Part shown: positions 23,859 through 61,585 of the stretch, in pieces
How positions within the stretch are numbered: the first letter of the stretch is position 1
Layout of the letters: each line of letters begins with the position of its first letter
Assembly: GCF_036588685.1 (NCBI RefSeq)
Contig: NC_086376.1
Span: forward strand, 60,078,001 to 60,142,000
Direction of reading: 5' to 3'
DNA from: Mytilus trossulus
Lineage: Eukaryota
Length of the DNA stretch: 64,000 nucleotides
Notes under the pieces: model-generated
What the model was told of the DNA's origin: nothing
The model's database searches: none
The model's input: the letters and a program-made list of their open reading frames with translations, nothing else
Translations under genes and position numbers: made by a program

Positions 23859-23910
23859 ATGTTAACATTAATTATAAGTGTTTTAATTGGAATATTGAAC
23901 GGTGTTTTGG
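23859..23910 (+). CDS. Probable signal-peptide exon of the Ig-superfamily (Lachesin/IgLON-like) gene
   Basis: ATG at 23859 gives MLTLIISVLIGILNGVL(G), then the strong donor G|GTGAGT; phase 1 matches both 43678 and 55561. Linkage to the downstream exons is inferred. Confidence 0.65.
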
Positions 23911-26900
23911 GTGAGTATGTTAATTAGATTTTGTGCATGCAGTTGTTTCTTTGCTTGTAAAATGTTTTCATCACAAAAAAAAAGATGAAAGGATATAAAA
24001 TGAATGTACATACTGAATCGATCAAACACGTTTAAAACATGAATATATGTAGGTTTTCATACTTTTAGTTTTCAACATAACCATGATAATAAAAAAGGAA
24101 ATTAATGTGTGGTGTTAAAAGGGTCGTATAGAGAAAATAAGAGTTTTCAGAGAGTTTTTGAAATGTCGATTCACCAATGCATGCATATTTTAAAAGATTA
24201 TTTCTCAAAAGCCTGAAAGGTTGGATAAAAATATTTAAAAAAAATATATGCAGCATTTAAAGTAAAATAATCGTTTTAGAAGGAATTGTTGTTTTAGAAA
24301 GCAAATACTTTTATGCTGTTAGATAATTCACAAATTTGCAGGTACAAATGTATAACATTTGCAAGCAACGATAACATTTTCAATGGCTTTTGATTTATAA
24401 AAAAATGTTACAAGTTGTTTATCAGATGCAGAATCACGACATGAAATTGTAATCAAAATGGTTCCCACAGTTTTTTCACGACTTGTTATTTCTAATTATG
24501 ACTTTGCACTTTACATTTACTACGCTAATATGGCGGGGTATCAAGTAGTATTTCTATTATTAGAGACAGGTACTAATTACTAACAAGATGTCATTTTTGT
24601 TTATAATGATGTAATATAATGGGTATGTCTACCTAATTGTCAGAATCATTGCCAGGTATGTTTTACAATCATGCTTAGCCATGCTGGTTGATAGCCCTTC
24701 AGACGGGCGTCAAGTATTCTTACAAGTGTTATAACTTTGAACACTTTAAGATCTCCAGAAAAAAATCTATTTTCAAGTGAAAATAAAGTTAGATACCAAC
24801 TTTGATTTGAAAATAAGATACCCACTTATATTTTAACAAGGATGTGCATGTATCATATGCAAAATAACTCGCTGACATGTTGCTTTTTGAACTTTTCAGT
24901 AAAATCTGAATTAATTTAGACTGTTCATCAGAAGGAATTGAAAAAAATGCCGTGTTTACACCACAAACTTTACTCAAGAGTAACCTCTATGAGAACGAAA
25001 AAAAATAATATTCTCAAAATCCAGAAAATTTTATTATTTTTCTGAGAAACGCATTTCAAATTTAATTGGCTAGTTCCTGCAATGTCTTAAAACTTTTACA
25101 TGTGCACAGGTTTATCTGTACTCGCAGTAAAATTTGTGGTGTAAATGCCAAAAGGTTATGACGAGCCTTAACAGCTTTTAATGTCTAGATTCATATAAAC
25201 ATATCTTTAAAAATTCCGAATCCGTTATGCTTTTTCATACGTGAAATTAGATTAGTTCCATATCATTTATCGCAGACAATCTATAGGGCACGAGATTTTC
25301 TGACACGTGAGATAATTATTGTTTTGATCTATGTTGTCTCTTCAGTATGATTTCTGATTGGCCCAGTTGGGTTACGTGATTATCAAAATGTACATTATTT
25401 TTATCTCATCATAATTATCCCGGATAGTAAATTCATTAAAAGTTTGATGAATGATTCTAAGAAGCCAGTTGTCACCGCTAAGTTGCTCATCAAGATAAGT
25501 AAACTAGAATATCAAAATAAAACAGATGCTAAATAACACGTGAGAGAAATTGTTATCTATGTCCGGTTTCCGCATTCGGAGAGGTTAATTACAATAAACT
25601 TTGACTTTGTTACCACTACATCCCTAGCTCCCTTAGTTCACTAAAAGCTTTAAGCTATCTGGTAAACAAGAGGATGGTTTAAACATTTTCAAATTTGTCC
25701 CAGTATTATATAAGTATTCAAGGTTTTATATTCCTCGTAGATTCTGAGAAACACGTGACGAACCGATCAATATAAGAACACAATATAGTTGAGAAAAGTG
25801 ATATCACAAAAAATTCAAAACGGAAAGTCCCTTATCAAATGGCAAAATCATAAGCTTAAACACAGCAAACGAATGGATAGCAACTGTCATATTTCTGACT
25901 TGGTACAAGCAATTTCTTATGTAGAAAATGGTGGATTGAATCTGGTTTTATAGCCTAGATAAACCTCTCACTTAAGGACATAGTTTCAAGTGTTATGAAA
26001 AAGTTGTACGAAGAACATTGGAGCAATCACAGAGCCAGGAACAAATGGTCTTAAAATTATTCGATAACATAAACTGACAAATGAAAGATAGGAATTATAC
26101 AAAACAAAACACACAATTAACTTTTTTTATCAAGACTTCGGTATATTCAGCGCGGTTGTATATTCGCACATGTATATCTTTTGCTTTCACGTTACTAAGT
26201 TAGTACGTAGAAATGTTGGCGAAGAATAAGTCATTTAAAATATAGCATTAAAGAGATGTGGTGTGATGTTAATGGGACAGATAACTATCAGAGTTTATAT
26301 ATATATATGTGGTTTGGATGTAGGCAACTTAAATAGTATAGGTCACTATATGTATTTTAAAATCTACTAAAATGCGAAAAAAAATCTAGTTTTTACTGGA
26401 AGAACATAGACTTATAATAAAAATAAATCATACGAGTCATAAGTTCCTTTGATAATTTCTCATTTTCATTTGAAAATTCTATGTAACTTAATCTCATCTC
26501 GCAATAACAGTTACTTATAATACAACATTAAATTCAGTGTTATTTATATCATGTATATATAGAATAGAAAGCCATTATATATATATAATAAATAAGAAGC
26601 TGTAACATTTAAGCATGTTAGAAAATTCGCCTATTTTAAGTGCATTATTTACAGTACAAAACATTTCGACGTCTATTTAAGATAAGATAACAGGCTTTTG
26701 CACAACAAAGAATAATACTAATATATGTGAATACAGAACTACTTTATAAAATAGAGAATGGAAACGGGGAATGTGTCAAAGAGACAACAAAACGACCAAA
26801 GAGCAGAAAGCAGCTGAAATTTAAGCTATTGGAAAATAAGTTATATAACCATTAGATCCTATACTGTCATACTGTAGCAAACATTTTAAGTTCGTTAAAT

Positions 26901-29212
26901 GATACTTTAGCAGTATTTAGTTACGGAAAAGTAGTACAATTACACATAATCAGAAGATAATTAGTCATAAAACAAACTAAAACAGACTATGTACATCACA
27001 TTTAATGATGAAATAATTGCTATATTAACCAAATCACTGTATATATATAGAATAACATTTTCTGTTCCATTGTGCAAATAAGTTTGTGAAAATGTAATGT
27101 CATTTTATTTTTAAGTAAAAACTGAAAGATAGGCCAGTTGTTAAAATCCGTAAATTTTGGAATCTAAATGTTTTAATTTTTTCCGAATTGTAATTACGCG
27201 CTCTCTCTTTCCAACGCCTATGGTCGTCACACGACATTTGCTATTAAACGTCATACTTCTCAAACAAATATGTATCTAAATTATTTCTATCTTTGAAAAA
27301 AAAACATTTTTCGATTAGTCACACTTAAAAGAAAATGTAAATATCTGTTTCATCATATTGCAATTTTCAATGGTTCCTTTGTATGTATAACGACATCTGG
27401 TAGATATTTGGCAGGTCATTAGGTTGGCTTCACAGTGTTGCACATTTAATCTCCCGTGGTGACACAAAACTTAAGCGGTTGAAACGGTATTAATGAAAAT
27501 GAGGCATGGACGGAAGACTTGGTTCCTGTAGTGTGCCGAGATTAAAATGATACACAAAAAATATGGGTTGGCAGTTTTAGTTTGGATTTTGTATGAGTAA
27601 TAATACTCAAAAGCTTGAATTATGAAATAAATTTTATGATAATATTGACTTTGCTTTTATTTACGAAATCAGAAATATATAGGATGATTAAAAAGCAGTT
27701 ATAGATATACTTGATTACAAAGGCAAGTTATGCCTAATTCGTCATACAATGTAATGGTAATTGCAACAGGAAAAGAAAACACATTACGGCCATGTTTGTT
27801 TATAAGGCTAACAAGTTTAGGAATTGCACTTTAAATCTTTATTACAGGCGAATCATCTTATTAGTGATTTCCATCATCATACTTTTGTTATTCAATCTTA
27901 CGTCTGGTAATGTTCAACGGCAGTTCGATAATTTATAAATTTGTAGAATCACTTAAATGTTCTGTCTGTTTTCTACATTGAAATTCTGTACAGATTAGTT
28001 TTGGTTATCGCATTATATGTTGTCTTCGTGTACACTGTTCAACAATTAGTTGTAAAGAAATTGTTGCGAAGAATATGCAGTATTAGAGCACAGGACGACA
28101 TGATGCCATGAAATATAAATTTCCTTTTAAATATTAGTTCATCCATGATAAACAAAAGTTCCGTAGCATATTTTTTTCTATTTATAGACATATTACTGAC
28201 GGAATCAACAGAATGAATATGTGTTTTAACAGGAACAGATAGATCTATTATGCATGGTTATATCAAACTTTCCAGAGGAACTTAAGTTAACACATATACG
28301 TTGACAGTGATATTGACAGGTCAAATACTCGACTGTTAGCAAATTGCGATGACAACTTATTATTCTTTTGGTTTATGAAGACTATTTTGGTGACTTCTAC
28401 TGTTTTCAAAAAATCTTTTCCTTCTATTGATATTATTGTATGTTATTAAATACCAGAGACATGATATCTAAAAACAACATGATGACTTCCCGACAAATAT
28501 GTCCTATCCCTATAAGTTATCATTTGGTATTGTAAGAAGATGGTATGATAAACTGGACTCCTGTTGTGTTCACTTATCGCTACACTGACTTCGGTGCAAG
28601 GCTATAGATGGAATGGCGGACCAGTTTAATGGTATGATTGCCAATTAGACAACAGTTTCACTATCCACCAGAGTCCTAATGACATAGATGTAAGCAACTG
28701 TACTGTGATTTATACAATGGGCCCATATACTGTATAGTCACCCATAAAAGACCCCGGCATGTAAAATTATTCAAACGAGAAAAACAACGTTAGGATGTAT
28801 ATGGCAAAACAAATAATAAAATAGGTATGATAGACATGCTTCCGACTACGGACAAGGGCACTAAAATGTGGCGGTATTAAACACAATTGTGGCCACTGGG
28901 CACTTCTTATACATTCTAACCTAGATCAGTGATCATGGTGATGCAACAGCACACCATAATAATTAACTCTATAAATAAAGAGTTGGGTATGACTTTATTC
29001 AACCGATTGGTAGGAAGCCTACAAAAAAATAAGAAAAAGACAGAATTCCAGCAGTTTACGAAATCTATTCAAAGTCAATTACAACTTACTAATACATAAG
29101 TCATGCTCTTCCAGACTGAAGAATGCTAGTTAAATAAACTGAATTTGGCAAATACAATACAAGTCATGATAATTGGGTCGGTATCAATTGTTTTAGTTAA
29201 GGATACAGTTCC

Positions 29213-40119: not shown

Positions 40120-42068
40120 TTTTTTATACGACCGCAAATTTTGAAAAAAATTTCGTCGTATATTGCTATCACGTTGGCGTCGTCGTCGTCGTCGTCGTCG
40201 TCGTCCGAATACTTTTAGTTTTCGCACTCTAACTTTAGTAAAAGTGAATAGAAATCTATGAAATTTTAACACAAGGTTTATGACCATAAAAGGAAGGCTG
40301 GTATGGATTTTGGGAGTTTTGGTCCCAACATTTTAGGAATTAAGGGCCAAAAAGGGCCCAAATAAGCATTTTCTTGGTTTTCGCACTATAACTTTAGTTT
40401 AAGTTAATAGAAATCTATGAAATTTTGACACAAGGTTTATAACCACAAAATAAAGGTTGGGATTGATTTTGGGAGTTTTATTTTCAACAGTTTAGGAATT
40501 AGGGGCCAAAAAAGGGCCCAGATAAGCATTATTCTTGGTTTTCGCACTATAACTTTAGTTTAAGTAAATAGAAATCAATGAAATTTAAACATAATGTTTA
40601 TGACAACATAAGGAAGATTGGTATTGATTTTGGGATTTTAGGTCCCAACAGTTTAGGAATTAGGGGCCAAAAAGGGACCCAAATAAGCATTTTTCTTGGT
40701 TTTCGCACCATAACGTTAGTATAAGTAAATAGAAATCTATGAAATTTAAACACAAGGTTAATGACCATAAAAGGAAAGTTAGTATTGATTTTGGGAGTTT
40801 TGGTCCCAACAGTTTAGGAGAAAGGGGCCCAGAGGGTCCAAAATTAAACTTTGTTTGATTTCATCAAAATTGAATTATTGGGGTTCTTTGATATGCCGAA
40901 TCTAACTGTGTATGTAGATTCTTAACTTTTGGTCCCGTTTTCAAATTGGTCTACATTAAGGTCCAAAGGGTCCAAAATTAAACTTAGTTTGATTTTAACA
41001 AAAATTTAATCCTTGGGGTTCTTTGATATGCTAAATCTAAAAATGAACTTAGATTTTTTATTATTGGCCCAGTTTTCAAGTTGGCCCAAATCAGGGTCCA
41101 AAATTAAACTTTTTTGATTTCATCAAAAATTGATAAATGGGGTTCTTTGATATGCCAAGTCTAACTGTGTATGTAGATTCTTCATTTTTGGTCCCGTTTT
41201 CAAATTGGCCTACATTACGGTCCAAAGAGTCCAAAATTAAACTAAGTTTGATTTTAACAAAAATTAAATTCTTGGGCCTCTTTGATATGCTGAATCTAAA
41301 CATGTACTTAGATTTTTGATTATGGGCCCAGTTTTCAAGTTGGTCCAAATCAGGATCTAAAATTATTATATTAAGTATTGTGGAATAGCAAGTCTTTTCA
41401 ATTGCACAGTATTGTGCAATGGCAAGAAATATCTAATTTCACAATATTGTGAAATAGCAATTTTTTTTTTAATTAGAGTTATCTTTCTTTGTCCAAAATA
41501 GTAAGCAAGAAATATCTTATTGCAAGATTTTTTTTTAATTGGAGTTATCTTTCTTTGTCCAGAATCAACTTAAATCTTTGTTATATACAATAAACAATGT
41601 ATATTCACTTTTTACTACCAACTGATAAATTTAAATAATCTTTACCATTCAGTGATAACAAGCAGTTTTTTTACATCATGTATTTAAATGAGTAGTAATT
41701 GTTGCAAACTCCATTAGAATATTTTAATTCAAATTAGTTTTGGAATAAGGGAAAGGGGGATGTGAATAAAAAATTGGGTTAAATTTTTCTCATTTGAAAT
41801 TTCATAAATAAAAAGAAAATTTCTTCAAACATTTTTTTGAGAGGATTAATATTCAACAGCATAGTGAATTGCTCTAAGAGAAAACAAACAATTTAAGTTC
41901 ATTTGAATACATTCATTCTGTGTCAAAAACCTATGCTGTGTCAACTATTTAATCACAATCCAAATTTAGAGCGGAATCCAGCTTGAATGTTGTGTCCATA
42001 CTTGCCCCAACCGTTCAGGGTTCAACCTCTGCGGTCGTATAAAGCTACGCCCTGCGGAGCATCTGGTT
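40120..42068 (+). mobile_element. Non-autonomous Helentron-associated (DINE-1/HINE-like) element, copy 1
   Basis: T-run; subterminal IR TTTATACGACCGCA (40123-40136) / TGCGGTCGTATAAA (42030-42043); partial IR after the left copy; (GTC)n; ~160-bp and ~130-bp internal tandem repeats; 3' hairpin GCTACGC-CCT-GCGGAGC; TT ends; no TSD. Confidence 0.88.
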
Positions 42069-43677
42069 GCATATGTTTTCTTCCAAAAACCACATGAGAT
42101 TTATTTCATCCATTGGGTGCAGATAATGGAGTTAAAACTGCTGACCCTTCAAACTTATTTTAGTTTGTCACCAATTTTTGTTTGGGTTAGTGATGCTCTG
42201 CAATCTTCATTTTATTGTGGACATTCATTTGTTTGTTGGTGACGGTCATTTCCATACTGTTTAATTTGTATTTAATTTTTCTTTTTTTTTTTAATTGTTA
42301 TCTTCTTCCCGCCTTTTTAATAAAAAAAGATGAAGGAATCTGAATTGTACTAAAGGTCCTGGTGATCTTATCTTGCCAGTGTTTACACCTCTTAATTTAT
42401 ATAAACACGAATTGTTCACCTAATTAACATTGGCATAGCTTTATCATTCTGTAAGGGAATGCATCATTTATTTTGATGGGTAGGTTAATTTAGATGTCAG
42501 ATTCCAATTTGACAGGGCTGCAGTTGTTTATAGCACTGTTATGCACATTGCTCCAGAGTCAGTTTTTTTGTACTCTGTTTTTTAACATCCTGTAACAAGT
42601 TGGCAAATCTTTGGCATTTCACACCTCCTGGCCTCCTTATTGAACTCTCAAATCAAATTGTTTGGCAAATGAAGCATAAACTATCTAAAAGGGTCAGCAG
42701 GTCTGTCAATCTTTAGAATGTAACTTACCATTAAAAGGTTATAACATCAAGAAATTTTATTCGAGAATGATGTTAAATTTTCAAAGTTTCTCAGCTCTTA
42801 AATGTATTGACAGCTACCAACCACATTATTTAGTGTCCTCACTTTTAAATAAATAATAATAATAATAATTTTATTTGCAAAAATACACCCATATGGGTCA
42901 AGCAAACACAAATACAACATTTAATATAGACAGATATAAATCTTGTACAACGTACAGTGAAAGCAGCCAATGTCAAAACTTTTTTCTACTTGAAGATTTT
43001 GTTTGAATAAGAAAGCTGTTTGGTATATCCAGGTTATATTATTAAAGGATATTTGCTACAAGTCCTCATACAATAGTTCTGTTTAGACAGGTTTCTTGTT
43101 TACATATTGTTTGCTTTACACAGGTTTTACTGTAATTACATACAAGCAATATCAGCTTCCAACATTAAAAGATATTTTTTTTGGATTTAATGTTTATGTC
43201 TTTGATAAGCTTGATAACTTTGTCTGTATTGGTAGACATGGTAGGTTGGCTCCAGAGGAGTAACCTCCTTAGAGATCACATGGCTTCCTTTTGATACTTG
43301 TTTATATTGAAGAATATTTCAAAGAAAATATCATTTTCAACACCATATTATTATCTCAAGTTAAAAGTATTTGTGACTGTGTCACATTCAAGGTCAAATG
43401 TTAAGTATGACTTTAGACAGTGCCACTTACAAACTTGAGTGTTTGGGTGTGAATTTAGATGTTTAAGAGCCTCTCAGTTGTTACATTCCAAATGACCTGT
43501 TTAATTTGATTGTAATTTCCTCTAATTCTAACCATCAGCTAGCATTTTATGTTTACCCTTGTAAGCTTGGTGTTTTGATAAGCTGAAAAGATATCTAAAT
43601 TTCGTGTACAGCAACTAAAAATTTAACATAGAAAACAGCTGTTGTAACAAACTTTTTTAAATCTTTGTGTTTTGCAG

Positions 43678-43867
43678 TTGGAGGACAACCCACCTTGAAT
43701 GTAGACTTTGAAATGAAGAATACCACCAAGTATAAAGGGGAAATTGTACGTCTCCGTTGTGAGATTTCTGGAAACCCGTTTCCCAAGTACAGTTGGTTCA
43801 AAGACAGCATAGAAATTGGAGATAAAGAGGACCGATTCAATGTGAAATTGACGCCATGGGGTTCAAG
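43678..43867 (+). CDS. Ror: ROR ectodomain exon a: Ig domain, first half
   Basis: (V)GGQPTLNVDFEMKNTTKYKGEIVRLRCEISGNPFPKYSWFKD...KLTPWGS(R); AG/GT; phases 1 to 2. Confidence 0.9.
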
Positions 43868-44839
43868 GTAATAATTTTTTGTATTTTCTTGTAATCTTTC
43901 AACATTGTGTATTTGATTTTTACAAAGATTTGGAAACTGCAGAAGATTGTAATCTTTCAACATTGTATTTTTGATTATTAAAAAGATTTGGAAATTTCAG
44001 AAGATAGTAAAATGAGTGATTGAAAATATAGTTTTAAAGTAAAGGTTAATTTTACTGTTGATGATTTAAACAAAGGAGGGATGCGAGAACATAAAATAAA
44101 CCATTTAGTGGATTAAGATAAATACAAAAATTGTTAAAATAAACTTTTGTTAAGAGTAAGAAAATAAACCAGATGTATTATCTCCTACAGCCTATAGATT
44201 TAAATTAGTCAAAGTAATATGGAGTTAATACAAGGATTATGTGTTTAGGTGAGGGATAGCTATCATCTGGTTGTAAGCAGTTATAAATCTGTTCATGTTG
44301 GCAATATTTAACATCTTTTGTATGTAAAATAAGCAAGCATGTTCGTAGTTTACTTTTTAGGTGTGCAGAAATGTAAACAATTTTTTCGCAAGATAGCAGT
44401 AACTGTTCTTATGCATTTCATTCTTGTAATTTATTTATCCATGAATTACATGCCACTGTACAGAAATGGATTCAAAACAAGCTATAATAGATAAAAAGCA
44501 CTATAACTTCTAATCTTAAATGTTGATGAAAAGACAAAACTAAATATTACAGACAAAAATCATCAAAAGAAGACATTGAAAAATAAATAACTGTTTTCAT
44601 AGTTTACATTATAAGTGCTCGGAACTGTAAACAATTTAATAACAACTGTGGCAACTGTTCTTGTATTTTTCATGCTTGTTGTTTTTTGTATTCTTGAACT
44701 TCATGCCATTGTACAGTAATGGTTTCAAAACAAATAATAACAGTAAATAGCTATTCTGAAAACAAACAAAAACTTAGCTAGGATGCTGAATTATAAAGAA
44801 CATTCAATTAGCAACTTATAAATTTATTTATTTTTTCAG

Positions 44840-44946
44840 ATTGAAGATAGAGAAATCAGTACCCCATGACAGTGGTTATTATATGTGTATAGCTGCTAAC
44901 AGGGCTGGAAACAAAAATGCTACAGCTTATCTACAGATCAAAAATG
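44840..44946 (+). CDS. Ror: ROR ectodomain exon b: Ig domain, second half
   Basis: LKIEKSVPHDSGYYMCIAANRAGNKNATAYLQIKN; DxGxYxC motif; phases 2 to 1. Confidence 0.9.
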
Positions 44947-45641
44947 GTAGGTCAAAGGGGGACAACTATTTTACAACTAAAGTAAATCATAAAGTTCTAA
45001 GATTCAGATTTTTATCTCTCAAACATACTGTTATTTAACAAGACAGTTACTAAGCTTCATGTATTCAGCACTATCACTTTTTTCTTCTTCAGTAATTAAT
45101 TTGAATTCTAGTATTTGCAAGCTTTATCCCATTGCTTTACTATTATCAAAATTAATAGGTATTTAAGATTCAGAATGCAATTTAAATTTCCATTTACAGT
45201 GCCACCACCTGCTTAATTTTAAGGTGGAGTCATACTAAATTATTTCTTTTATCTGTTTGAAAAGCATTAAATTAACATTTAAAAAATATCCCAATATTTA
45301 ATTGTTTTCACCTGCATTCAGCTGATAGTGTCAGAAATAGCTGAACATTTGTTAAGCTATAATGATAATAAGTTGGCTATCATAGTTCAAAGGTTATGGA
45401 GTTTTTAAATTCTTTTATATCTCCATTTGTGTTAAAAAAAACTCTAGTCCATAATAAAAATCTGTTAATGTGTAGTTTTTTGGATCCTCAAGCCACCAAA
45501 TTTTACCATATTATTTTATTTATTTCTAGTTTGTATTTCTTTTCAATTTTCTTATAAAAGATTTAATTTTATATCATTTCATAACCAATTAATACTGATT
45601 TTTACCTCTCTAATATTGTATTTCCACATTTTTTTCCACAG

Positions 45642-45729
45642 AACATCCTCCCAAAAAGGATAACAAGGGTGGAGGATCTAAGACTGATGTGGATTCATCA
45701 TTCCCAGATCTAGGGGATGATACAGATAG
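45642..45729 (+). CDS. Ror: ROR ectodomain exon c: Ig-CRD linker
   Basis: ccacag acceptor; (E)HPPKKDNKGGGSKTDVDSSFPDLGDDTD(R); AG|GTAAGT donor; phases 1 to 2, needed to keep frame between exons b and d. Confidence 0.8.
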
Positions 45730-46920
45730 GTAAGTTCAGTCAATACCAGGAAATATTCCATCTCTGGAATTAAAAGGTTGTTTATTTATACATTTGCATT
45801 CGACAAATGTATTCTTCAAACTGAACAGAATTTGGATTTATTTTAACACATGGTTCAAAGTCTATAAATTGATTATGAAAATAAGAACTCAGTTATTATT
45901 TTTTGTAAATTCTCTATAAATTTCATTTTGAATTAAAAGAAAGTAACAGTAAGAATATTTTTTACTTATCTTCTAATTAAATGAAGAAGTAGAGAAAGAA
46001 AGTGTATAGACTAATCTAAAAATGGTTAAATACTATGACCAAAAAACTTGTCTTAAGTTGCATTTTAAGATGGAAAATTTTCTTTAAAGATTTTCTGGAA
46101 AGTATGATCCAGAAATATATAAAAAGTAAGTAATCATTTTAATGGATTGAGGGTTTGCATGGCTTCTATTTACATTTTTTATCTTTTAATTATACTTTTT
46201 CCCTGACTATTTGTAGGATTTCATACACACTCTTTATATAGTTTTGATTGCTAGTGCTTTAAATTTTAATTTGTGAAAGATTTTTTGATTTTTTAATTGC
46301 AAATTATGAGGGGTCAGCAAGCATTTGCAGCTCTGCCACCCATCTTTTTGAATTAGTACATAAAAATTGAAAAAAAATCTGTGTAAATAGAAGCACATAT
46401 GAAATCCCAATTCTTAATTGTATCTATATATTGTCATCCTGCTTTTTGGCTATTCTGCGGCAGTCATTCATATGTTTATATATATTTTGATGGCTTGCAC
46501 TTGCCTTTTGTGAATTTTCTGTGTTTTCAATTACACTGCATTCACTATCCTCTTCTTTAAAAACTAATTCTATGTAAAATATTTCATCTTGCAGTGACTA
46601 GATCTGATATAAAATATTATTAAACCTGTATAATAATGGTAAAGAGCACGCAAAAGAAGAAAAATATTTAGAAATTATAAAAAACATTGCAAGATGAAAT
46701 TATTAAATTCTGTACATTTTTAGCTCTAATGTGAATCAATATTAATTTTCTATTTGTAACAATACTGTATTGAGTTAGCTTCAAGCTAATTTTTCTCAAG
46801 CTTTTTCCTAATAATGCTTTGCATAATAATTTTCATGTTCTTACTCTAAATGTAACAACTAATAAGACTATTATACAAGAGCTGTTGATCTTTACAATAT
46901 GCAATTAACCCATGATACTA

Positions 46921-47370
46921 TACAGTTAACCTGTACATGAGCAAACCTTTACACTAAATAGTTAACATTTGCCCAATGGAGTTAACCTTTACATTATACA
47001 GTTAACCTTGACACTTTATAGTTAACCTTGACACTTTATAGTTAACCTTTACACTATGACAGTTAACCTCTCACTATACAGTTTACCTTTACCTTTACAC
47101 TATACAGTTTACCTTGACACTTTATAGTAAACCTTTAAACTACAACAGTTAACCTTTACACTATATAGTTAACCTTGACACTATACAGTTAACCTTGACA
47201 CTTTATAGTTAACCTTGACACTATACAGTTAACCTTGACACTTTATAGTTAACCTTTACACTATAACAGTTAACCTCTCACTATACAGTTTACCTTTACC
47301 TTTACACTATAAAGTTAACCTTTACACTTCAGTTAACCCTTACACTAGTTAACCTTCACACTATACAGTT
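46921..47370 (+). repeat. 20-bp minisatellite
   Basis: About 20 units of gttaacctt(g/t)acact(a/t)ta(c/t)a. Confidence 0.92.
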
Positions 47371-48098
47371 ATACAGATTGAAACTAATTTAGTAGCATAT
47401 ACATGGCATAAATATGATATATTCATAAAAAATTATAAAACAAAAAAGACAGAAGAGGACATAAGACTTCAGACAATCAGTTGCACAAATTTGTAAATTG
47501 ATAGAAATGCACCATTCAAATCTTTTAATTATGAATATTTCAAATGTGTAATTTACTTTGATTTGACATAATTTACTAGTTTCATAGTTTATTAAAGAAA
47601 GCTCAGCCGTAGAAGACTGTGTAACAGGAGCATATTATACACAATATAAATCGCAACATATTTCATAATACATACAGCATACATTTTTGAATTATACATC
47701 TGAAATATGTATGTTGTACATTTGTATGCTCATATTATTTTTAAAGCATGTTGAATTTTGTGATAGTTTTTAGTTTGTGTATAAATGCATAAAGGCAAAT
47801 GCTTGCTGTTATCTGATCTTTACATACATTATACCTTAGAATAGAAATGGATATCAAAGAAACTATGAACAGGTTTCTCATTTATGGGAGGAAAGACATA
47901 TTTTAAGAGAAACATGTCAAATAAATGTATAAAATTGGGAAATAACATGTAAAATAGATGAACCAATCTGTTATGGTGATCGTATTATAATTGTCAATAC
48001 ATTATTAAAAAAAAATCATCTTTCCTAGCTGGCAAAATGATTTTAATGATAATATGGAGAAGAAAGAGATTAGAATTTCTGAATACTAACTTTTACAG

Positions 48099-48250
48099 AT
48101 TGAAAGAGGAAAGCAGTGGCAGTACTAAAGATGACAGCAATGGTTTCTGTCAACCGTTTCGAGGAAACATGTGTGCCAGGTTTATAGGCAATCAGACAAT
48201 TTATGTCAATTCTGAGTATGCTCAAGGTGTAAAGGAAGAAAAATTTATTG
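48099..48250 (+). CDS. Ror: ROR ectodomain exon d: Frizzled-like CRD start
   Basis: GFCQPFRGNMCARFIGNQTIYV, compared with vertebrate ROR1 [21 protein letters not shown] (recalled from memory); phases 2 to 1. Confidence 0.93.
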
Positions 48251-48777
48251 GTATGTATGAATTAGCAGTGGCAGAGTCAACACTTTTATCAACAATTTAT
48301 ACATGTTTTTCTGGGAAAGATTAGGGTCTGAAACTAGGAACCTGCATTCATTGCTTCAAAAAGTGGGGGTATACGGTTTTACCTCTGTCTGTCCAACCGT
48401 TATATAAATATTTTTTATCCCATGTTCTCCACTTTGATCAAGTGCTCTAAAGATAGAAACAAATGAAGCAAGATTAAATTTACAATTAATTGGCTTAAGT
48501 TTTATATCTACAGATGGATCACTTAGGCAAACTGACAGTGTCAACTAAGTAAAATTAAAAGATCTCCCTGATTGGGTTTTGGTCATGCAATGGGAAATTG
48601 GCCTATTTCCTTTTTTCCTGCTTCATGATTTATCTAAGGTACCAATCAGCTTTTACATGTTTAGATACTTTTTAGCTAATACTGTCATAGTAGAATGAAA
48701 AAGAGAATTGATGTTAAAAGGGACATAACTCAAAAAATGTACTGTGTAAGTAAAATATTGTATTGCAATCTTTTCAG

Positions 48778-48987
48778 CTGCTTTTACTGTGATTGCTGCC
48801 TCCAGTGATATGTCAGCTGAATGTCAGAAGTATGCCATAGAATTTCTATGTTTCTACACCTTCCCTTTATGTGATCGTCAACATATCAACCCTACCCCTC
48901 GTAAAGTCTGCAGAGACGAGTGTGAAATGCTAGAGGGCACTATCTGTAAAAAGGAATATGTCATTGGTCGACACCATCCAATGATTG
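48778..48987 (+). CDS. Ror: ROR ectodomain exon e: CRD core
   Basis: AAFTVIAASSDMSAECQKYAIEFLCFYTFPLCD...PRKVCRDECEMLEGTICKKEY; ROR CRD cysteine pattern; phases 1 to 1. Confidence 0.93.
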
Positions 48988-49747
48988 GTAAGTTTGCTGT
49001 TATATGGGTTGATATCTGATTATTGGAATATGATTTAAAAGTGGCCCTTTTTAATATGATGTACTGGTTCTTTTGGAGTACCCTTTGTTGTTCTTTTTTT
49101 TACCTTGATTTGTATTGTCTGAATTTATTTATGAGATTTGGACATCTGTTAACACCTGGTGCCTCTAGTTTTTTTAACTGAAATAACCTCTGATCTTTGT
49201 TAAAAAGTGAACACTTCTTGTAACATTCAATTAGAAGGAATACATGTAAAATCTTTTGTAAATAACTTCAAACAGACTTCAAACTGTTTCAGATGTAGTT
49301 ATATGGTTCAGTTTTGTTAACAGTTTGAAGGTTTTAAATACCAAAGCTCCTGACAATTATGTGTATAATAAAAAAACAAGGGATGTAGTGTGACAATTGG
49401 CTGTTTCAGAATCTAAAGCATCATGAGTAATTTCATTGTTCATACCCAAAAGTGAAAAGAACGTTATGTTATTGAATTTCCATTGTTTATAACGTTTTAA
49501 ACCAATCAAAACACTTTAGTGTACGTTTTTGAAAATATTACCCAGAATGCATTAGATTCTGAAACAGCGAATTCATGATGTTTAACCCTCTGGGCACTTG
49601 ACATAACCCAAAGCAATAGAACAGCACTTTAACTGCTATTCTTCATCTAGAAGTCATAATGAGACATAAAAATGGATCAAAAGCACATACATAACTCAGA
49701 ACTAGTAGTATCATTTGCATAATTAAAATATTTTTTTTTGTTTTTAG

Positions 49748-49855
49748 GAGAAGGTTTCCTTCCAAAGTGCTATGACTTACCACCAAGAGGTACCCCAGAG
49801 GGGGATAAATGTAAAGGTATTAATGTACCCATTGATCCTACACAACGACCAGAAG
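49748..49855 (+). CDS. Ror: ROR ectodomain exon f: CRD end
   Basis: (G)EGFLPKCYDLPPRGTPEGDKCKGINVPIDPTQRPE; LPxCxxLP motif; phases 1 to 1. Confidence 0.9.
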
Positions 49856-50464
49856 GTATGTCACATCCTTATAGAAAATTATTGTTTCGTTTTTTGGTGG
49901 TTTTTTTTAGTTGTGATTCACAAAATTGAAAAATTATGAAGTCAAGTATACCAGTCAAAGATTCTTTTGTTAATAATTATAGAAGCTATTCAGTTTGTAC
50001 TGAAAGGTTTTCAAAAAAAAGCTAGTTGTTGAAACACAAATTGCTTGATTTATGTTATTTGTAAAGTACATTGTACTATTGATAATCTGAAGAACACTTA
50101 AACTAATGCATTATAAACAATATATGGAAATTGTCATTAATAACACCACTAAAAGTTAGGTAACAGTACAATGAAAAAGCTTGATGAAATATTGGCAAAT
50201 TAAAGGAGAAAACTTGTTTTATAACTTTTTATTTTTTTTAATTAACGCTACATCTGTTAAAAGTTTCCATTCAATCAGAATTAAAATGGTAGACAATGAT
50301 ATGCCTAGTCAGACACTATACATTGTGATTATATTTTATTTTATTTTCAGACTTCTGTATTATGTATTTGCAAAAAGGAATTGTAACACGATTTTATACC
50401 TTCCTCTAATATCAATATATTGTGTGAATTTCTATGCTTATTTACTGTTTCCTTGTTTTTTAAG

Positions 50465-50590
50465 TTCACACATGTTATGGTGGTAATGGCATGAAATACA
50501 AAGGATCTATCAATCACAGTCGGTCTGGAAGGCCGTGTATGAACTGGAAAAATAATCCACATTTTAAAGGCAGTGAATATCCTGATCTAG
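50465..50590 (+). CDS. Ror: ROR ectodomain exon g: Kringle, first half
   Basis: (V)HTCYGGNGMKYKGSINHSRSGRPCMNWKNNPHFKGSEYPDL; CYxGxGxxYxG..SGxxCxxW motif; phases 1 to 1. Confidence 0.9.
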
Positions 50591-51456
50591 GTTAGTGGAT
50601 GATAAACAATTAAGAAAACAGACATCTATATGCCAAAAAGAGGCTTAAAACAAAGGCATCATCCATAAATTAAGCAGTGACTACCAAAGATGTGTATTGA
50701 GCAATTGTTTCTCTTGTAACTTCTTTTAGATTACTATAAGACTGACTTTATCTTCACATATGTTTAAAAAATAAAAGATTTCATCAAACATTAATGACAG
50801 TTTATTCAAACAAAATTCAACAAAAAAAGGATGAGTAAAGGGTGGCATACATGATCAACAAGCATCTTTGTCATAATCTAGCTCTTTATCACTGTAAAAA
50901 TGAGACATTAAAATCTAAATTGACAAAAACAAAATAGTACAGACATTGGGTTTAACTTGGGACAGACACATTAATTTATGTCTGAGTAAGAAAGTTTTTG
51001 TTGGTATAATCATCATATATCTGTATATTGATAAGTTTAGATTATTTCTATTCCATTCATGATCTATATATCATTCAGTGAAGCAAAACAAAGTTTTCTC
51101 TGCCCTGATAACAGGATTGCATAATATATTTTAACTACATTAAAATATCTTTATAACTGGTCTGAAACATGTAAAGATTTTTCAAATCACACAAAATTCT
51201 GGTTTTCCTGTCAATGTAAAATATAAATATGCTCATCTGATTTCATTCTCATTTTGCTCTCATGTCAAAAACATATGCATATGAGTATTTAAAATATTTT
51301 GGTCCGATTCATGTTCATGTTGAAAAGATTAGGGTTTTGACTGAGATTGGTGAACTGAACATGAAAATGTGATTGTGGGAGCAGGACATTGGTATCACCT
51401 ATGGAGTTGTATGGACACATATTCTTGTTTTTTGTTATATTACATTTATTTTATAG

Positions 51457-51561
51457 GAAACCATCACCTGTGTAGAAACCCAAATGGTACATATACAGGA
51501 CCATGGTGCTATACCGACCCTTCATATCATCATACAGAATTATGTGATATCCCTAAATGTG
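51457..51561 (+). CDS. Ror: ROR ectodomain exon h: Kringle, second half (last ROR exon seen)
   Basis: (G)NHHLCRNPNGTYTGPWCYTDPSYHHTELCDIPKC; CRNP..PWCYT motif; donor G|GTATGT, phase 1. Confidence 0.93.
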
Positions 51562-51568
51562 GTATGTA

Positions 51569-51820
51569 TTTTTATGCCCCTGTTGTAGCTGAGGAGGCAT
51601 TAAGTTTTACCCTTATCTGTATGTTTGTCCATCAATACGTCAGGATTGATTTCCATTCTCTAACTTTAGTTTGCCTCAACCAAATATTTTGAAACTTATA
51701 CACAATGTTTTTTACCAAAAAACTCAGTTCAAGTACAAAATTTGGATTGCATCACTTTTACAGGTCTTGAGTTATTTCCCTTTATAACATTACATGCACG
51801 AGGATCATCTGTGTCTCATT
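51569..51820 (+). mobile_element. Older, decayed HINE-like fragment
   Basis: Begins tttttatgcccc, followed by a decayed GTCY-like tract and a tctctaactttagt segment resembling the HINE internal repeat. Confidence 0.45.
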
Positions 51821-52001: not shown

Positions 52002-52057
52002 TTTTTATACGACCGCAAATTTTGAAAAAATTTTCGTCGTATATTGCTATCACGTTG

Positions 52058-52089
<32 letters not shown>

Positions 52090-53966
52090 CGAATACTTTT
52101 AGTTTTCGCACTCTAACTTTAGTAAAAGTGAATATAAATCTATAAAATTTTATCACAAGGTTTATGACCACAAAAGGAAGGTTGCTATTGATTTTGGGAG
52201 TTTTGGTCCCAACATTTTAGGAATTAGGGGCCAAAAAGGGCCCAAATAAGCATTTTCTTGGTTTTCGCACTATAACTTTAGTTTAAGTTAATAGAAATCT
52301 ATGAAATTTTGACACAAGGTTTATGACCACAAAAGAAAGGTTGGGATTGATTTTGGGAGTTTTGGTTTCAACAGTGTAGGAATTAGGGGCCACAAAAGGG
52401 CCCAAATAAGCATTATTCTTGGTTTTCGCACAATAACTTTAGTTTAAGTAAATAGAAAATAATGAAATTTAAACACAATGTTTATGACCACAAAAGGAAG
52501 GTTGTTATTGATTTTGGGAGTTTAGGTCACAACAGTTTAGGAATTAGGGGCCAAAAAGGGACCCAAATAAGCATTTTTCTTGGTTTTCGCACCATAACTT
52601 TAGTATAAGTAAATAGAAATCTATGAAATTAAACACAAGGTTTATGACCATGAAAGGAAGGTTGGTAATGATTTTGGGAGTTTTGGTCCCAACAGTTTAG
52701 GAATGAGGGACCCAAAGGGTCCAAAATTAAACTTTGTTTGATTTCATCAAAATTGAATAATTGGGGTTCTTTGATATGCCGAATCTAATTGTGTATGTAG
52801 ATTTTTAACTTTTGTCCCTTTTTCAAATTGGTCTACATTAAGGTCCAAAGGGTCCAAAATTAAAATTCGTTTGATTTTGACAAAAAATTAATCGTTTGTG
52901 TTCTTTGATATGCTGAATCTAAAAATGTACTTAGATTCTTGATTATAGGCCCAGTTTTCAAGTTGGTCCAAATCGGGGTCCAAAATTAAACTTTGTTTGA
53001 TTTCATCAAAACTTGAATAAATGGGGTTCTTTGATATGCCAAATCTAACTGTGTATGTAGATTCCTCATTTTTGGTCTTGTTTTCAAATTGGTCTACATT
53101 AAAGTCCAAAGGGTCCAAAATTAAACTTAGTTTGATTTTAACAAAAATTGAAATCTTGGGGTTCTTTGATATGCTGAATCCAAACATGTACTTAGATTTT
53201 TGATTATGGGACCAGTTTTCAAGTTGGTCCAAATCAGGATCTAAAATTATTATATTAAGTTTTGTGCAATAGCAAGTCTTTTCAATTGCACAGTATTGCG
53301 CAATGGCAAGAAATATCTTATTGCAAAATATTGTGAAATAGCAATTTTGTTTTTAATTAGAGTTATCTTTCTTTGTCCAGAATAGTAAGCAAGAAATATC
53401 TAATTTTAAGAATTTTTTTTATTTGGAGTTATCTTTCTTTGTCCAGAATCAACTTAAATCTTTGTTATATATACAATATACAATGTATATTCACTTTTTA
53501 CTACCAACTGATAAATTAAAATAATCTTTACCATTCAGTGAAAACAAGCAGTTTTTTTACATCTTAATATTTTATGATGTATTTAAATGAGTAGTTATTG
53601 TTGCAAACTCCATTAGAAATTTTAATTAAGATTAGTTTTGGAATAAGGGAAAGGGGGATGTGATTAAAAAAATTGGGTTCAATTTTCTCATTTGAAATTT
53701 CATAAATAAAAAGAAAATTTCTTCAAACATTTTTTGGAGAGGATTAATATTCAACAGCATAGTGAATTGCTCTAAGAGAAAACAAAAATTTTAAGTTCAT
53801 TAGAACACATTCATTCTGTGTCAGAAACCTATGCTGTGTCAACTATTTAATCACAATTCAAATTTAGAGCTGAATCCAGCTTGAATGTTGTGTCCATACT
53901 TGCCCCAACCGTTCAGGGTTCAACCTCTGCGGTCGTATAAAGCTACGCCCTGCGGAGCATCTGGTT
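52002..53966 (+). mobile_element. Non-autonomous Helentron-associated (DINE-1/HINE-like) element, copy 2
   Basis: Colinear with 40120-42068, same orientation and termini; differs by scattered substitutions and small indels. Confidence 0.88.
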
Positions 53967-55560: not shown

Positions 55561-55658
55561 GTGCACCATTTTTAAACTACGATTCTTTGACCATTACTTC
55601 TATAAAAGGAAAGCACGTTGTATTACCCTGTGTCGTCAAAAACTTAGGATTTTCTAGT
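55561..55658 (+). CDS. Lachesin/IgLON/DIP-like gene: Ig1, first half
   Basis: tttgtag acceptor; (G)APFLNYDSLTITSIKGKHVVLPCVVKNLGFSS; GTAAGT donor; phases 1 to 0. Confidence 0.87.
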
Positions 55659-56262: not shown

Positions 56263-56464
56263 ATTATATGGTTTTCACCGAGCGGTGGTGCTATAGCTAA
56301 AGACACCCATCTGTATTCACAAGATGATAGAATCTCTGTACAACATCCTTACAAAACAGACTATAATTTAGTAATAGACAACATCCGGGAATCTGACGCT
56401 GGGATATACATATGTATGGTGTTAGGTGGACAATCAGAGAAACATGTCACTTTAAAAGTACAAT
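56263..56464 (+). CDS. Lachesin/IgLON-like: Ig1, second half
   Basis: IIWFSPSGGAIAKDTHLYSQDDRISVQHPYKTDYNLVIDNIRESDAGIYICMVLGGQSEKHVTLKVQ; phases 0 to 1. Confidence 0.9.
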
Positions 56465-56825: not shown

Positions 56826-56984
56826 CACCACCAACGCTGGACGTACAAAGATCTACACCAAATCTTAAAATAGTAATGGAAGGGGATACGTTATCATTAA
56901 CATGTGCAGCTACAGGGAAACCGGAACCTGTAATCAGCTGGTACAGAACTGTAGAAACAGATTCACCCGAGCAGACAAAAGAAG
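56826..56984 (+). CDS. Lachesin/IgLON-like: Ig2, first half
   Basis: (S)PPTLDVQRSTPNLKIVMEGDTLSLTCAATGKPEPVISWYRTVETDSPEQTKE; phases 1 to 1. Confidence 0.9.
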
Positions 56985-58052: not shown

Positions 58053-58096
58053 GCGTCACTGATGAGTCCTATGTAGACGAAACGCGCGTCTGGCGT
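58053..58096 (+). ncRNA. Type I hammerhead ribozyme 3
   Basis: Same core; stem II guc/gac. Confidence 0.85.
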
Positions 58097-59871: not shown

Positions 59872-60000
59872 ATCTTGGAACGACTGGTACGGTTTTATCA
59901 ATAAATGATATTGCCCGAGAAGCGGCTGGATCTTATGAATGTGTGGCATCTAACAATTTACCACCAAATGTATCCAGAGAAATTATAGTAACTGTTCATT
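59872..60000 (+). CDS. Lachesin/IgLON-like: Ig2, second half
   Basis: (D)LGTTGTVLSINDIAREAAGSYECVASNNLPPNVSREIIVTVH; GxYECxAxN motif; GTAAGT donor; phases 1 to 1. Confidence 0.88.
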
Positions 60001-60458: not shown

Positions 60459-60770
60459 TAAAATTGAGAAAGGAAAAGGTGAATGTGTCAAAGCGACAAC
60501 AACCCGACCATAGAGCAGAAAACAGCCGAAGTCCACCTATGGGTCTTCAATGTAGCGAGAATTCCCTCACCCGTAGGTGTCCTGCAGCTGGCCCCTAAAA
60601 AATATGTATACTAGTACAGTGATAATGGACGTCATACTAAACTCCGAATTTATAAAAACAGCTTAAATTTAAAACATACAAGACTAACAAAGGCCAGAAG
60701 CTCCTGACTAGGGACAGGCGCAAAATTGCGGCGGGGTTAAATATGTTTATTGGATCTCAACCCTCCCCGC
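60459..60770 (-). mobile_element. SINE-like repeat, antisense copy
   Basis: Reverse complement of the 22410-22620 family, extended further. Confidence 0.65.
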
Positions 60771-61126
60771 ATATCATATTTATTGGCAGGGTAAACTTGT
60801 ACTTTTGTGATCTTAGATTTATAAGAAAGTGTACTATAGAACTCGAATAGAAGTATACAATACCATATCCATACTGAAACAGCATAACTCGAATATGGAC
60901 AGATAAAATTATGGCCATAAGAAAACAAAAAAGGCATAATGGTTTACTTTTTTAAAGTTGTTATTTTGATGGAGAGTTGTTTCATTGGCACTCACAGCAC
61001 ATCTTCCTGTATCTATTTAAAAGTCAAAGGCATTCAAATGTACTTCAGAATCAATTACTGATTTAGTGGCACGAACTTGTCTTGAGAAAAGCTTTATTCC
61101 ACGTTTGTCTTTTCTCTTAATTTTTA

Positions 61127-61320
61127 TCATTGACATTTCTTTCTGCCATTTTGTAGATGAACCTCAGATATACCACAAGAAGGACTAAGTGTCATTGATA
61201 TTTCTTTTCACCGTTTTGTAGATAAACCTCAGATATACCATAGGATGACCAAGTGTCATTCACATTTCTTTTCAACATTTTGTAGATAAACCACAGATAT
61301 ACCCCCAGAATGACCAAGTA
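61127..61320 (+). repeat. Tandem triplication (65/64 bp) of the Ig3 exon acceptor region
   Basis: tcatt..atttcttt...ttttgtagat.aacc.cagatatacc..a..a.gac.aagt at 61127, 61192 and 61256. Confidence 0.9.
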
Positions 61321-61585
61321 ACGAAGAAACCTGGTAAGACTGTTATATTCGAATGTGTTGCAGAGGGGTATCCCCTTCCTCAGGTTGTATGGAGGAGAAA
61401 TGGAAACATCATATCCAGAACCGAACCGTCGAACAAATTTAGACAGGATGTATATGAAGATAAAGATTCAATAATTTTGTCTCTACGAATCAATTACCTT
61501 GACGATAATGATTTTGGTACCTACACTTGTGAAGCAGAAAATAAATATGGATCATCAGCACACGATTATACCTTGGAAAAGACAG
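61286..61585 (+). CDS. Lachesin/IgLON-like: Ig3 (gene continues beyond the window)
   Basis: (Y)KPQIYPQNDQVTKKPGKTVIFECVAEGYPLPQVVWRRNG...LRINYLDDNDFGTYTCEAENKYGSSAHDYTLEKT; donor G|GTAATT. Confidence 0.92.

What the first reader, a model, noticed from the sequence alone, without database searches (positions are those of the whole stretch)
23859..61585. Predicted in-frame chimeric protein SP-Ig-Frizzled CRD-Kringle-Ig-Ig-Ig
Seen: the signal exon ends in phase 1; the ROR block starts and ends in phase 1 and totals 1086 nt (362 codons, no stops); the first Lachesin-like exon (55561) starts in phase 1. Both inclusion (>=675 codons) and complete skipping (>=313 codons) of the block keep the frame. 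Known: the ROR CRD binds Wnt, Lachesin/IgLON/DIP proteins are typically GPI-anchored three-Ig adhesion molecules, and phase 1-1 modules are the classic units of exon shuffling. Inference: a kinase-less Wnt-binding ectodomain on an adhesion scaffold (decoy or co-receptor), a domain order I do not recognise from any named family.
Basis: partly seen in the sequence, partly recalled or inferred. Interest (0 to 1): 0.9.

Follow-up and report, generated by a model that had tools for sequence, protein, structure and literature searches.

The report
Captured ROR ectodomain exons in multi-Ig gene
A 9.7-kb piece of a Wnt-receptor (ROR) gene, carrying only its extracellular exons, was copied next to a rolling-circle transposon into the first intron of a many-Ig-domain gene on another chromosome; the copy is still under strong purifying selection, so it looks like a young case of exon shuffling, but no RNA evidence for the fused protein could be obtained.

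Summary
The exons are real: ROR-type Ig, Frizzled CRD and Kringle (43678-51561), then Ig domains (55561-61585), all on the + strand, all in phase 1 and with no stops.

- The ROR block is a partial duplicate of a complete ROR gene on another chromosome (C1). That gene has its TM and kinase in a terminal exon right after the Kringle.
- The copy starts exactly at the 3' end of a HINE/Helentron-like element (42068|42069). It ends about 230 bp after the last Kringle exon.
- The two copies differ by 12 synonymous changes and 1 replacement in 226 codons (omega 0.02; introns 5-7% diverged). The captured exons are therefore translated, not dead passengers.
- The host is not a three-Ig Lachesin. Four more Ig domains and a Thr/Pro stalk lie just past the window.

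Frame compatibility alone proves little, because phase 1-1 is the rule for these modules. The block is 990-1002 nt, not 1086.

The Ig1 exon has no start codon or signal peptide of its own, and none lies between the block and it. Host transcription must therefore read through the block in sense.

The parts
23859..23910 (+). Putative first coding exon: 17-residue hydrophobic signal peptide, ends in phase 1
   Evidence: the only strict candidate (ATG, hydrophobic core, phase-1 consensus donor) in 20600-55560. The chance rate is about 0.5 per 35 kb. The region is unique in the genome and is not part of the C1 duplication.
40121..42068 (+). HINE/Helentron-like non-autonomous element (TE-L), about 1.95 kb, with T-run ends, subterminal inverted repeats and internal tandem repeats
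   Evidence: high-copy family (>30,000 first-look candidates); this copy is 95-96% identical to others. Its 3' end abuts the ROR-derived DNA exactly.
42069..51790 (+). DNA copied from the ROR gene on C1:13345100-13354519(-): part of an intron, 7 exons with their introns, and about 230 bp of the intron before the TM-kinase exon
   Evidence: 92-95% nucleotide identity, collinear. CpG o/e is 0.19 here against 0.81-0.93 in the flanks and 0.31 in the C1 copy.
43678..43867 (+). ROR Ig domain, first exon (phase 1 at start)
   Evidence: Ig_3/I-set, E 3e-7. 97% aa and 97% nt identity to C1.
44840..44946 (+). ROR Ig domain, second exon (donor 44946, or 44950 if the 48099 acceptor is used)
   Evidence: I-set C-terminal half, E 7e-5; splice sites.
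48107..48250 (+). Fz CRD exon a (cysteines 1-2); acceptor 48107 or 48099, not 48029
   Evidence: Two synonymous differences from C1.
48778..48987 (+). Fz CRD exon b (cysteines 3-8)
   Evidence: Pfam Fz, E 2e-9. ROR2 CRD structure 9fse, E 3e-20. 100% aa identity to C1.
49748..49855 (+). Fz CRD exon c (cysteines 9-10)
   Evidence: only synonymous differences from C1.
50465..50590 (+). Kringle exon a
   Evidence: Pfam Kringle, E 7e-7. One replacement (M/I) against C1.
51457..51561 (+). Kringle exon b, ends in phase 1 (donor TGTG|GTATGT)
   Evidence: Pfam Kringle, E 2e-8. 100% aa identity to C1 with five synonymous differences.
52002..53966 (+). Second, younger copy of the same element family (TE-R), same orientation
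   Evidence: 97-98% identical to many genomic copies; 93.7% identical to TE-L. It is separated from the end of C1 homology by about 210 bp that match nothing else in the genome.
55561..55658 (+). Host gene Ig1, first exon; starts in phase 1 with no ATG or signal peptide of its own
   Evidence: No SP-like exon lies between 51562 and 55560, even at relaxed thresholds.
56263..56464 (+). Host Ig1, second exon
   Evidence: V-set/I-set, E 8e-7.
56826..56984 (+). Host Ig2, first exon
   Evidence: Ig_3, E 3e-9.
59872..60000 (+). Host Ig2, second exon
   Evidence: Ig_3, E 3e-4.
61286..61585 (+). Host Ig3 exon; the gene continues past the window (Ig4-Ig7 and a Thr/Pro stalk at L009 628-921, 1354-1644, 3071-3193+5924-6049, 6515-6802, 7305-7517)
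   Evidence: Ig_3/I-set, E 2e-16. Downstream exons.

Best explanation
A recent DNA-level partial duplication copied about 9.7 kb of the canonical ROR receptor gene on chromosome piece C1. The copy holds the Ig, Frizzled-CRD and Kringle exons with their introns, but not the signal-peptide exon or the TM-kinase exon. It landed directly at the 3' end of a HINE/Helentron-like rolling-circle element, in sense orientation, inside the long first intron of a multi-Ig (at least 7 Ig plus a Thr/Pro stalk) cell-surface gene on C4. Every captured exon set is phase 1-1 and kept its splice sites. The host's signal-peptide exon also ends in phase 1 and its Ig1 exon starts in phase 1. The cassette is therefore most likely spliced into the host mRNA, constitutively or alternatively, giving SP-Ig-CRD-Kringle-Ig(x7)-stalk: a kinase-less ROR ectodomain carried on an Ig adhesion-type scaffold. 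By analogy with kinase-independent ROR/CAM-1, it would act as a tethered Wnt sink or co-receptor. Shown: the duplication, its boundaries, the parental gene, the purifying selection, the frame compatibility and the host gene's extension. Inferred: the use of exon 23859-23910, the two fusion junctions, the role of the transposon and the Wnt-related function.
For: Parental gene: the CRD and Kringle exons are 100% identical in protein to C1:13345312-13348101(-). The best PF07714 hit in the whole genome (E 5e-96, 577-aa open frame) lies immediately downstream of the C1 Kringle exon, with a TM segment and a phase-1 acceptor. There is no kinase hit near C4:60.1-60.4 Mb, and no kinase motif in 200 kb downstream of the window. 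Extent: homology runs from 42069 to about 51790 only; 23300-24500 is unique in the genome, and no C1 match was listed for 36500-40115. Exact abutment to the element's 3' end is shown. Selection: 226 codons, Sd 12, Nd 1, dS 0.094, dN 0.0018, omega 0.02. If the C4 copy were neutral, about 25 replacements would be expected, P = 2.6e-10. Intron divergence is 4.6-6.9%, so the exon identity is not due to gene conversion. The Ig exon is 97% identical in aa and nt. All 10 CRD, 6 Kringle and 2 Ig cysteines and all 14 splice dinucleotides are intact. The cassette brings no start or signal exon of good quality. The host Ig1 exon has none either, and none lies between 51562 and 55560, so host transcripts must traverse the cassette in sense. 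Frames are open for inclusion and for skipping. Precedents: HINE-like elements at breakpoints of functional gene duplicates and chimeric genes (PMC4067079); class 1-1 module shuffling (PMC8001218); the ROR/CAM-1 ectodomain alone sequesters Wnts (PMC3539944).
Against: The SP exon is a prediction, and its kind arises by chance about 0.5 times per 35 kb. Purifying selection shows that the cassette is translated, not what it is spliced to: a separate secreted ROR ectodomain would fit equally well. The dN/dS test cannot separate the two branches without an outgroup. C1 today has no copy of the element at the matching position, so a simple 3' transduction from C1 is not shown. Direct Wnt binding by ROR CRDs is itself debated (my recollection of the ROR2/Nrk structural work, not checked here).
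Confidence: 0.55

Rival explanations
1. The captured cassette is expressed as its own product, a secreted kinase-less ROR ectodomain (soluble decoy). It would be started from the host SP exon or from a weak internal candidate (42494-42557), and ended by read-through or polyadenylation in the intron after 51561. The multi-Ig mRNA would skip the cassette.
For: Purifying selection requires translation only. Read-through after 51561 stays open for 42 more codons. A relaxed SP-like exon lies inside the captured DNA at 42494-42557. Soluble or kinase-independent ROR function has precedent (PMC3539944).
Against: The donor at 51561 is intact and strong. The internal SP candidate has a weak donor (6/9) and an acidic N-region. 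Only 425 bp of captured DNA lies upstream of it, so a promoter would have to come from the element. Nothing marks a terminal exon.
Confidence: 0.22
2. Assembly artefact: the 9.7-kb block is a divergent haplotype of the C1 ROR locus wrongly placed between repeats on C4. The low dN/dS would then simply reflect two alleles of one functional gene.
For: Both ends of the block lie at repeats: the element end at 42068 and an ~80-bp dispersed repeat at 51740-51820. Allelic copies would give exactly such a low omega.
Against: Intron divergence of 5-7%, dS of 0.094 and a poorly alignable Kringle intron are high for alleles. The block is truncated inside two introns and sits in the middle of a 96-Mb scaffold. 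It carries its own small insertions, such as the ~80-bp element at about 42851-42934. TE-L's divergence from its family (4-5%) is similar in age to the duplication.
Confidence: 0.1
3. Dead passenger: the ROR exons are never included in any translated mRNA and are decaying pseudo-exons in an intron.
For: This is the default fate of gene fragments carried with Helitron-like elements (PMC4067079 reports captured fragments with stops and frameshifts).
Against: There is 1 replacement against 12 synonymous changes in 226 codons, P = 2.6e-10 under neutrality of one copy. There are no stops or frameshifts, and all cysteines and splice sites are intact.
Confidence: 0.03
4. Interleaved canonical genes: the block is the 5' part of a second full ROR gene whose TM-kinase exons lie further downstream, with the Ig gene nested in its intron.
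For: Same strand. The Kringle exon ends in phase 1, as in the parent.
Against: Homology to C1 stops about 370 bp before the parental TM-kinase exon. No kinase motif occurs in 200 kb downstream, and no PF07714 hit lies on C4 after 60.14 Mb within reach. Only two ROR-type CRD loci exist in the genome.
Confidence: 0.03

Closest known systems
ROR-family receptor tyrosine kinases (ROR1/ROR2, C. elegans CAM-1, Drosophila Ror/Nrk)
   Same: Ig - Frizzled CRD - Kringle in this order. The CRD exon matches the human ROR2 CRD structure 9fse (E 3e-20) and annotated ROR proteins. It derives directly from this genome's own ROR gene.
   Different: No TM segment and no kinase. The Kringle is followed by Ig domains of an unrelated gene.
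MuSK
   Same: Combines Ig domains with a ROR-like Fz CRD (and, from my memory, a Kringle in some non-mammalian vertebrates).
   Different: Order is Ig-Ig-Ig-CRD(-Kringle)-TM-kinase; here it is Ig-CRD-Kringle-Ig(x7) without a kinase. Recent origin by duplication from ROR, not shared ancestry with MuSK.
IgLON / Lachesin / DIP three-Ig GPI-anchored adhesion proteins
   Same: N-terminal run of I-set/V-set Ig domains encoded by phase-1 exons.
   Different: At least seven Ig domains plus a Thr/Pro-rich stalk. The best sequence matches are generic (DSCAM, titin, Robo, neurofascin, DIP). No family-specific signal.
Helitron/Helentron-associated gene-fragment capture and DINE-1/HINE-flanked new genes in Drosophila
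   Same: A gene fragment with introns is copied to a new locus and joined to the end of a rolling-circle element, giving a potentially chimeric gene (PMC4067079).
   Different: Here the fragment is a complete set of phase 1-1 extracellular modules landing in sense in a phase-1 intron, and it is under strong purifying selection. The donor locus shows no element at the breakpoint.
Kinase-independent ROR/CAM-1 Wnt sequestration; secreted Wnt antagonists with an Fz CRD (sFRP)
   Same: A CRD-bearing ectodomain acting without a kinase (PMC3539944).
   Different: That function is only an analogy here and nothing was tested. sFRPs pair the CRD with an NTR domain, not with Ig or Kringle.

Membership tests
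ROR receptor tyrosine kinase | Extracellular Ig + Frizzled CRD (10 Cys) + Kringle (6 Cys) | tested here: met
   Pfam hits exon by exon, cysteines counted in the exon translations, ROR2 CRD structure match.
ROR receptor tyrosine kinase | Transmembrane segment and intracellular tyrosine-kinase domain in the same gene | tested here: not met
   Present in the parental C1 gene. Absent from the C4 copy: homology ends before that exon, and no kinase lies within 200 kb downstream.
IgLON / Lachesin | Exactly three Ig domains followed by a GPI-attachment signal | tested here: not met
   Four further Ig domains and a Thr/Pro stalk follow on the same strand in phase 1. The terminal exon was not identified.
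IgLON / Lachesin | Family-specific sequence similarity | tested here: inconclusive
   Only generic I-set matches. No homologue of suitable length was found for the Ig1 exon.
MuSK | Ig1-3 N-terminal to the CRD, with a kinase domain | tested here: not met
   Domain order from the exon order; no kinase.
Helentron non-autonomous element (HINE/DINE-1-like) | T-run termini, about 13-bp subterminal inverted repeats, central tandem repeats, 3' palindrome, very high copy number | tested here: met
   Ends read (5' TTTTTTATACGACCG... and 3' ...CGGTCGTATAAAG...GGTT), internal repeats of about 130-160 bp, and >30,000 candidates. Features are as described in PMC4067079. The 3' palindrome and empty sites were not checked.
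Helitron-type 3' transduction | Element present next to the captured sequence at the donor locus | tested here: not met
   The C1 alignment starts exactly at the first base after the element and does not extend into it.
Chimeric (exon-shuffled) gene | Transcripts joining exons of the two parental genes | not testable with these tools

The most novel reading that the evidence does not exclude
An exon-shuffling event caught young. A rolling-circle-transposon-associated copy of three class 1-1 modules (Ig, Frizzled CRD, Kringle) from a ROR receptor was dropped in phase into the signal-peptide intron of a seven-Ig surface protein. It was at once fixed by selection as a new kinase-less, Ig-tethered ROR ectodomain. 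This domain order was not seen among the best 150 of 1.84 billion representative proteins.
Probability: 0.5. Interest if true: 0.75.

Novelty: new variant of a known kind. Interest (0 to 1): 0.6.

Why it matters
Exon shuffling of phase 1-1 extracellular modules is the textbook explanation for how animal cell-surface proteins were built, but nearly all examples are ancient and their mechanism is inferred. Here both parents are still recognisable down to their introns (dS about 0.09). One breakpoint sits exactly on a rolling-circle element. The captured modules also show clear purifying selection. If the fusion transcript exists, it gives a datable, mechanistically readable case of a new receptor-like protein. 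It also gives a natural experiment on what a ROR ectodomain does without its kinase.

Tried and rejected

Fetching more of C1:
- The C1 Ig exons, the C1 signal exon and the C1 side of the left breakpoint could only be seen as match coordinates and identities.

Searches that led nowhere:
- The 20-kb self-genome DNA search was swamped by the transposon.
- The representative-protein search with the CRD exon found ROR proteins and fragments but no protein from this species. Its top hit, a 2741-aa Malus zinc-knuckle protein, is a cysteine-bias artefact.
- Word-index searches with the Kringle and Ig1 open frames found only genomic ORF fragments of related species, or nothing.
- A terminal GPI/TM exon of the host gene was sought and not identified convincingly.
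- The Rfam scan of the window found nothing at gathering level.

Rejected:
- The 48029 acceptor, and with it the 1068/1086-nt block length.
- The Lachesin label.
- Gene conversion as the cause of exon identity, because synonymous divergence equals or exceeds intron divergence.

The joined protein was not sent to any search, fold or complex tool.

Full report
**Where the window lies.** The window is G000:C4:60078001-60142000 (+) of a 1.3-Gb, 32% GC genome. The closest protein matches are molluscan. The CRD exon is 75% identical to a Tegillarca granosa (blood clam) protein and 90% identical to unnamed ORF fragments. The animal is therefore probably a bivalve. I did not try to name it.

**The observation.**
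- Exon 23859-23910 encodes MLTLIISVLIGILNGVL plus one base, and has the donor TGG|GTGAGT.
- Seven exons between 43678 and 51561 encode an Ig domain (two exons), a Frizzled CRD with ten cysteines (three exons) and a Kringle with six cysteines (two exons). Pfam recognises each part, and the central CRD exon matches the human ROR2 CRD structure.
- Five exons from 55561 to 61585 encode three Ig domains.
- All domain boundaries are phase 1, and both inclusion and skipping of the block are open.
- The quoted length of 1086 nt is not reproduced. The long acceptor at 48029 gives 1068 nt, but it is not conserved in the parental gene (AG to AA, followed by a 5-nt indel). The real exon starts at 48099 or 48107, which gives 1002 or 990 nt.

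**What the frame match is worth.** Ig, Fz and Kringle modules and signal-peptide exons are class 1-1 / phase 1 almost by rule (PMC8001218).

**Origin of the ROR block.**
- Searching the animal's own genome with the CRD and Kringle exons found one other locus, C1:13345312-13348101 (-), identical in protein.
- The strongest tyrosine-kinase match in the whole genome (E 5e-96, 577-aa open frame) lies immediately downstream of that C1 Kringle exon. It is preceded by a TM segment and a phase-1 acceptor. C1 therefore holds the canonical ROR gene.
- The window's block is collinear with it, introns included, at 92-95% identity from 42069 to about 51790.
- The copy stops about 370 bp before the parental TM-kinase exon.
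- It does not include the region of the putative signal exon at 23859, which is unique in the genome.
- No kinase lies within 200 kb downstream.
- The block is thus a partial, DNA-level duplicate of the ectodomain exons only.
- Its CpG o/e is 0.19, against 0.31 in the C1 copy and 0.81-0.93 in the surrounding intron. This marks it as foreign to its present surroundings.

**How it got there.**
- The block is flanked by two copies of a ~1.95-kb, very high-copy element. The element has T-run ends, subterminal inverted repeats and internal tandem repeats, which are the features of Helentron non-autonomous elements (HINE/DINE-1-like; PMC4067079).
- The left junction is exact. The element ends at 42068 and C1 homology begins at 42069, while C1 itself has no element there.
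- The left copy is 95-96% identical to its relatives, an age similar to that of the duplication.
- The right copy is younger (97-98%). It is separated from the end of homology by about 210 bp of unique sequence, so it is probably an independent later insertion.
- HINE-like elements at the breakpoints of functional gene duplicates and chimeric genes are documented in Drosophila (PMC4067079).
- The association with the element is shown. The exact mechanism (end bypass, filler-DNA repair or template switching) is not. A simple 3' transduction from the present C1 allele is not supported.

**Is the cassette used?** This is the key new result.
- Over the five CRD and Kringle exons (226 codons) the two copies differ at 13 sites, 12 synonymous and one conservative replacement (M/I). 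This gives dS 0.094, dN 0.0018 and omega 0.02.
- The introns between these exons differ by 4.6-6.9%, so the exons have not been homogenised by gene conversion.
- If the C4 copy had drifted neutrally while C1 stayed constrained, about 25 replacements would be expected; P(1 or fewer) = 2.6e-10.
- The first Ig exon is 97% identical in both protein and DNA.
- All structural cysteines and all 14 splice dinucleotides are intact.
- The captured exons are therefore translated into something that matters.

**What they are joined to.**
- The captured DNA brings no convincing start or signal exon. The one relaxed candidate, 42494-42557, has a weak donor and an acidic N-region.
- The host Ig1 exon (55561) begins in phase 1, with no methionine in its open frame. 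No signal-like exon lies between the cassette and it, even at relaxed thresholds.
- The only strict candidate in the 35 kb upstream is 23859-23910. It lies just after the last exon of a carboxylesterase gene. Exons of that quality arise by chance about 0.5 times per 35 kb, so it is plausible but not proven.
- Whatever the true first exon is, host pre-mRNA must run through the cassette in sense. The cassette consists of short exons with good splice sites that were constitutive in the parent.
- Inclusion, giving SP-Ig-CRD-Kringle-Ig..., is therefore the simplest reading of the selection signal. I put it at about 0.55.
- A separate secreted ROR ectodomain, ending in the intron after 51561, is the main rival at about 0.22.
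- A misplaced divergent haplotype is possible but unlikely (about 0.1), given 5-7% intron divergence, truncation inside introns and private insertions.
- Dead pseudo-exons, and a second full ROR gene, are each about 0.03.

**The host gene is not Lachesin-like.**
- In the 10 kb after the window, on the same strand and in phase 1, lie exons for four more Ig domains and a Thr/Pro-rich stalk. In locus L009 they are at 628-921, 1354-1644, 3071-3193 with 5924-6049, 6515-6802, and 7305-7517.
- The Ig domains match only generic I-set proteins such as DSCAM, titin, Robo, neurofascin and DIP.
- I could not identify the last exon, so the type of membrane anchorage is unknown.

**Novelty of the architecture.**
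- A HMMER search of 1.84 billion representative proteins with the CRD exon returned 311 hits.
- Among the best 150, those of 230 residues or more that I examined are mostly ROR-type proteins (Ig-CRD-Kringle-kinase) or fragments of them.
- The exceptions are two crinoid giants with many Ig domains and several CRDs, and one skate protein with a CRD followed by two Ig domains.
- None has Ig-CRD-Kringle followed by the host-type Ig domains.
- No protein model from this species is in the collections, so this says nothing about expression.

**Function (inferred only).** ROR/CAM-1 can act through its ectodomain alone by sequestering Wnts (PMC3539944). A ROR ectodomain displayed on a long Ig stalk could act likewise as a tethered Wnt sink or co-receptor. 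From my own memory, not checked here, structural work has questioned direct lipid-mediated Wnt binding by ROR CRDs, so even the parental activity is not settled.

**Limits.**
- The spliced model was searched exon by exon by reference only.

**Verdict.** The exons and frames are real. This is a new variant of a known kind: transposon-associated exon shuffling that produces a chimeric gene.

Noticed in passing
window:19513-20562 (+): A 350-codon open frame with carboxylesterase/cholinesterase-like sequence ends here. It is apparently the last exon of the upstream neighbour gene, 3.3 kb before the putative signal exon.
   Followed up: no
window:61127-61319: A 65-bp unit holding the acceptor and first codons of the Ig3 exon (…ttttgtag|ATAAACC…) is repeated three times in tandem at 84% identity. 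The two upstream copies carry acceptor-like sites that would lead to early stops.
   Followed up: partly
It is a tandem repeat of about 356 bp, seen in all three frames. The Rfam scan of the whole window at gathering threshold reported no family at all.
   Followed up: partly
window:61660-61964 and about 37716-37918: SINE-like dispersed repeats of about 200-300 bp, with dozens to thousands of copies at 75-99% identity across all chromosomes.
   Followed up: no
window:62330-63210 (-): Open frames with reverse-transcriptase-like sequence (…FIIFIDWIMR…), probably a non-LTR retrotransposon fragment in the intron after Ig3.
   Followed up: no
window:42851-42934: An ~80-bp element present in the C4 copy but absent from C1, with very many 95-100% identical copies genome-wide (MITE-like). 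It inserted after the duplication.
   Followed up: no
L010-L022 (ext. 79.5-130 kb after window start): Downstream neighbours on the + strand look like a transglutaminase/kyphoscoliosis-peptidase-like gene, B-box/NHL (TRIM-like) single-exon genes, and a polypeptide GalNAc-transferase-like gene. They were judged from open frames only.
   Followed up: no
G000:C3:16.31-16.36 Mb, C4:20.13-20.15 Mb, C1:26.00-26.03 Mb: Three large tandem arrays of near-identical single-exon kinase-domain ORFs (about 289, 284 and 270 aa; period about 1.7-1.9 kb) appeared in the PF07714 scan of the genome.
   Followed up: no
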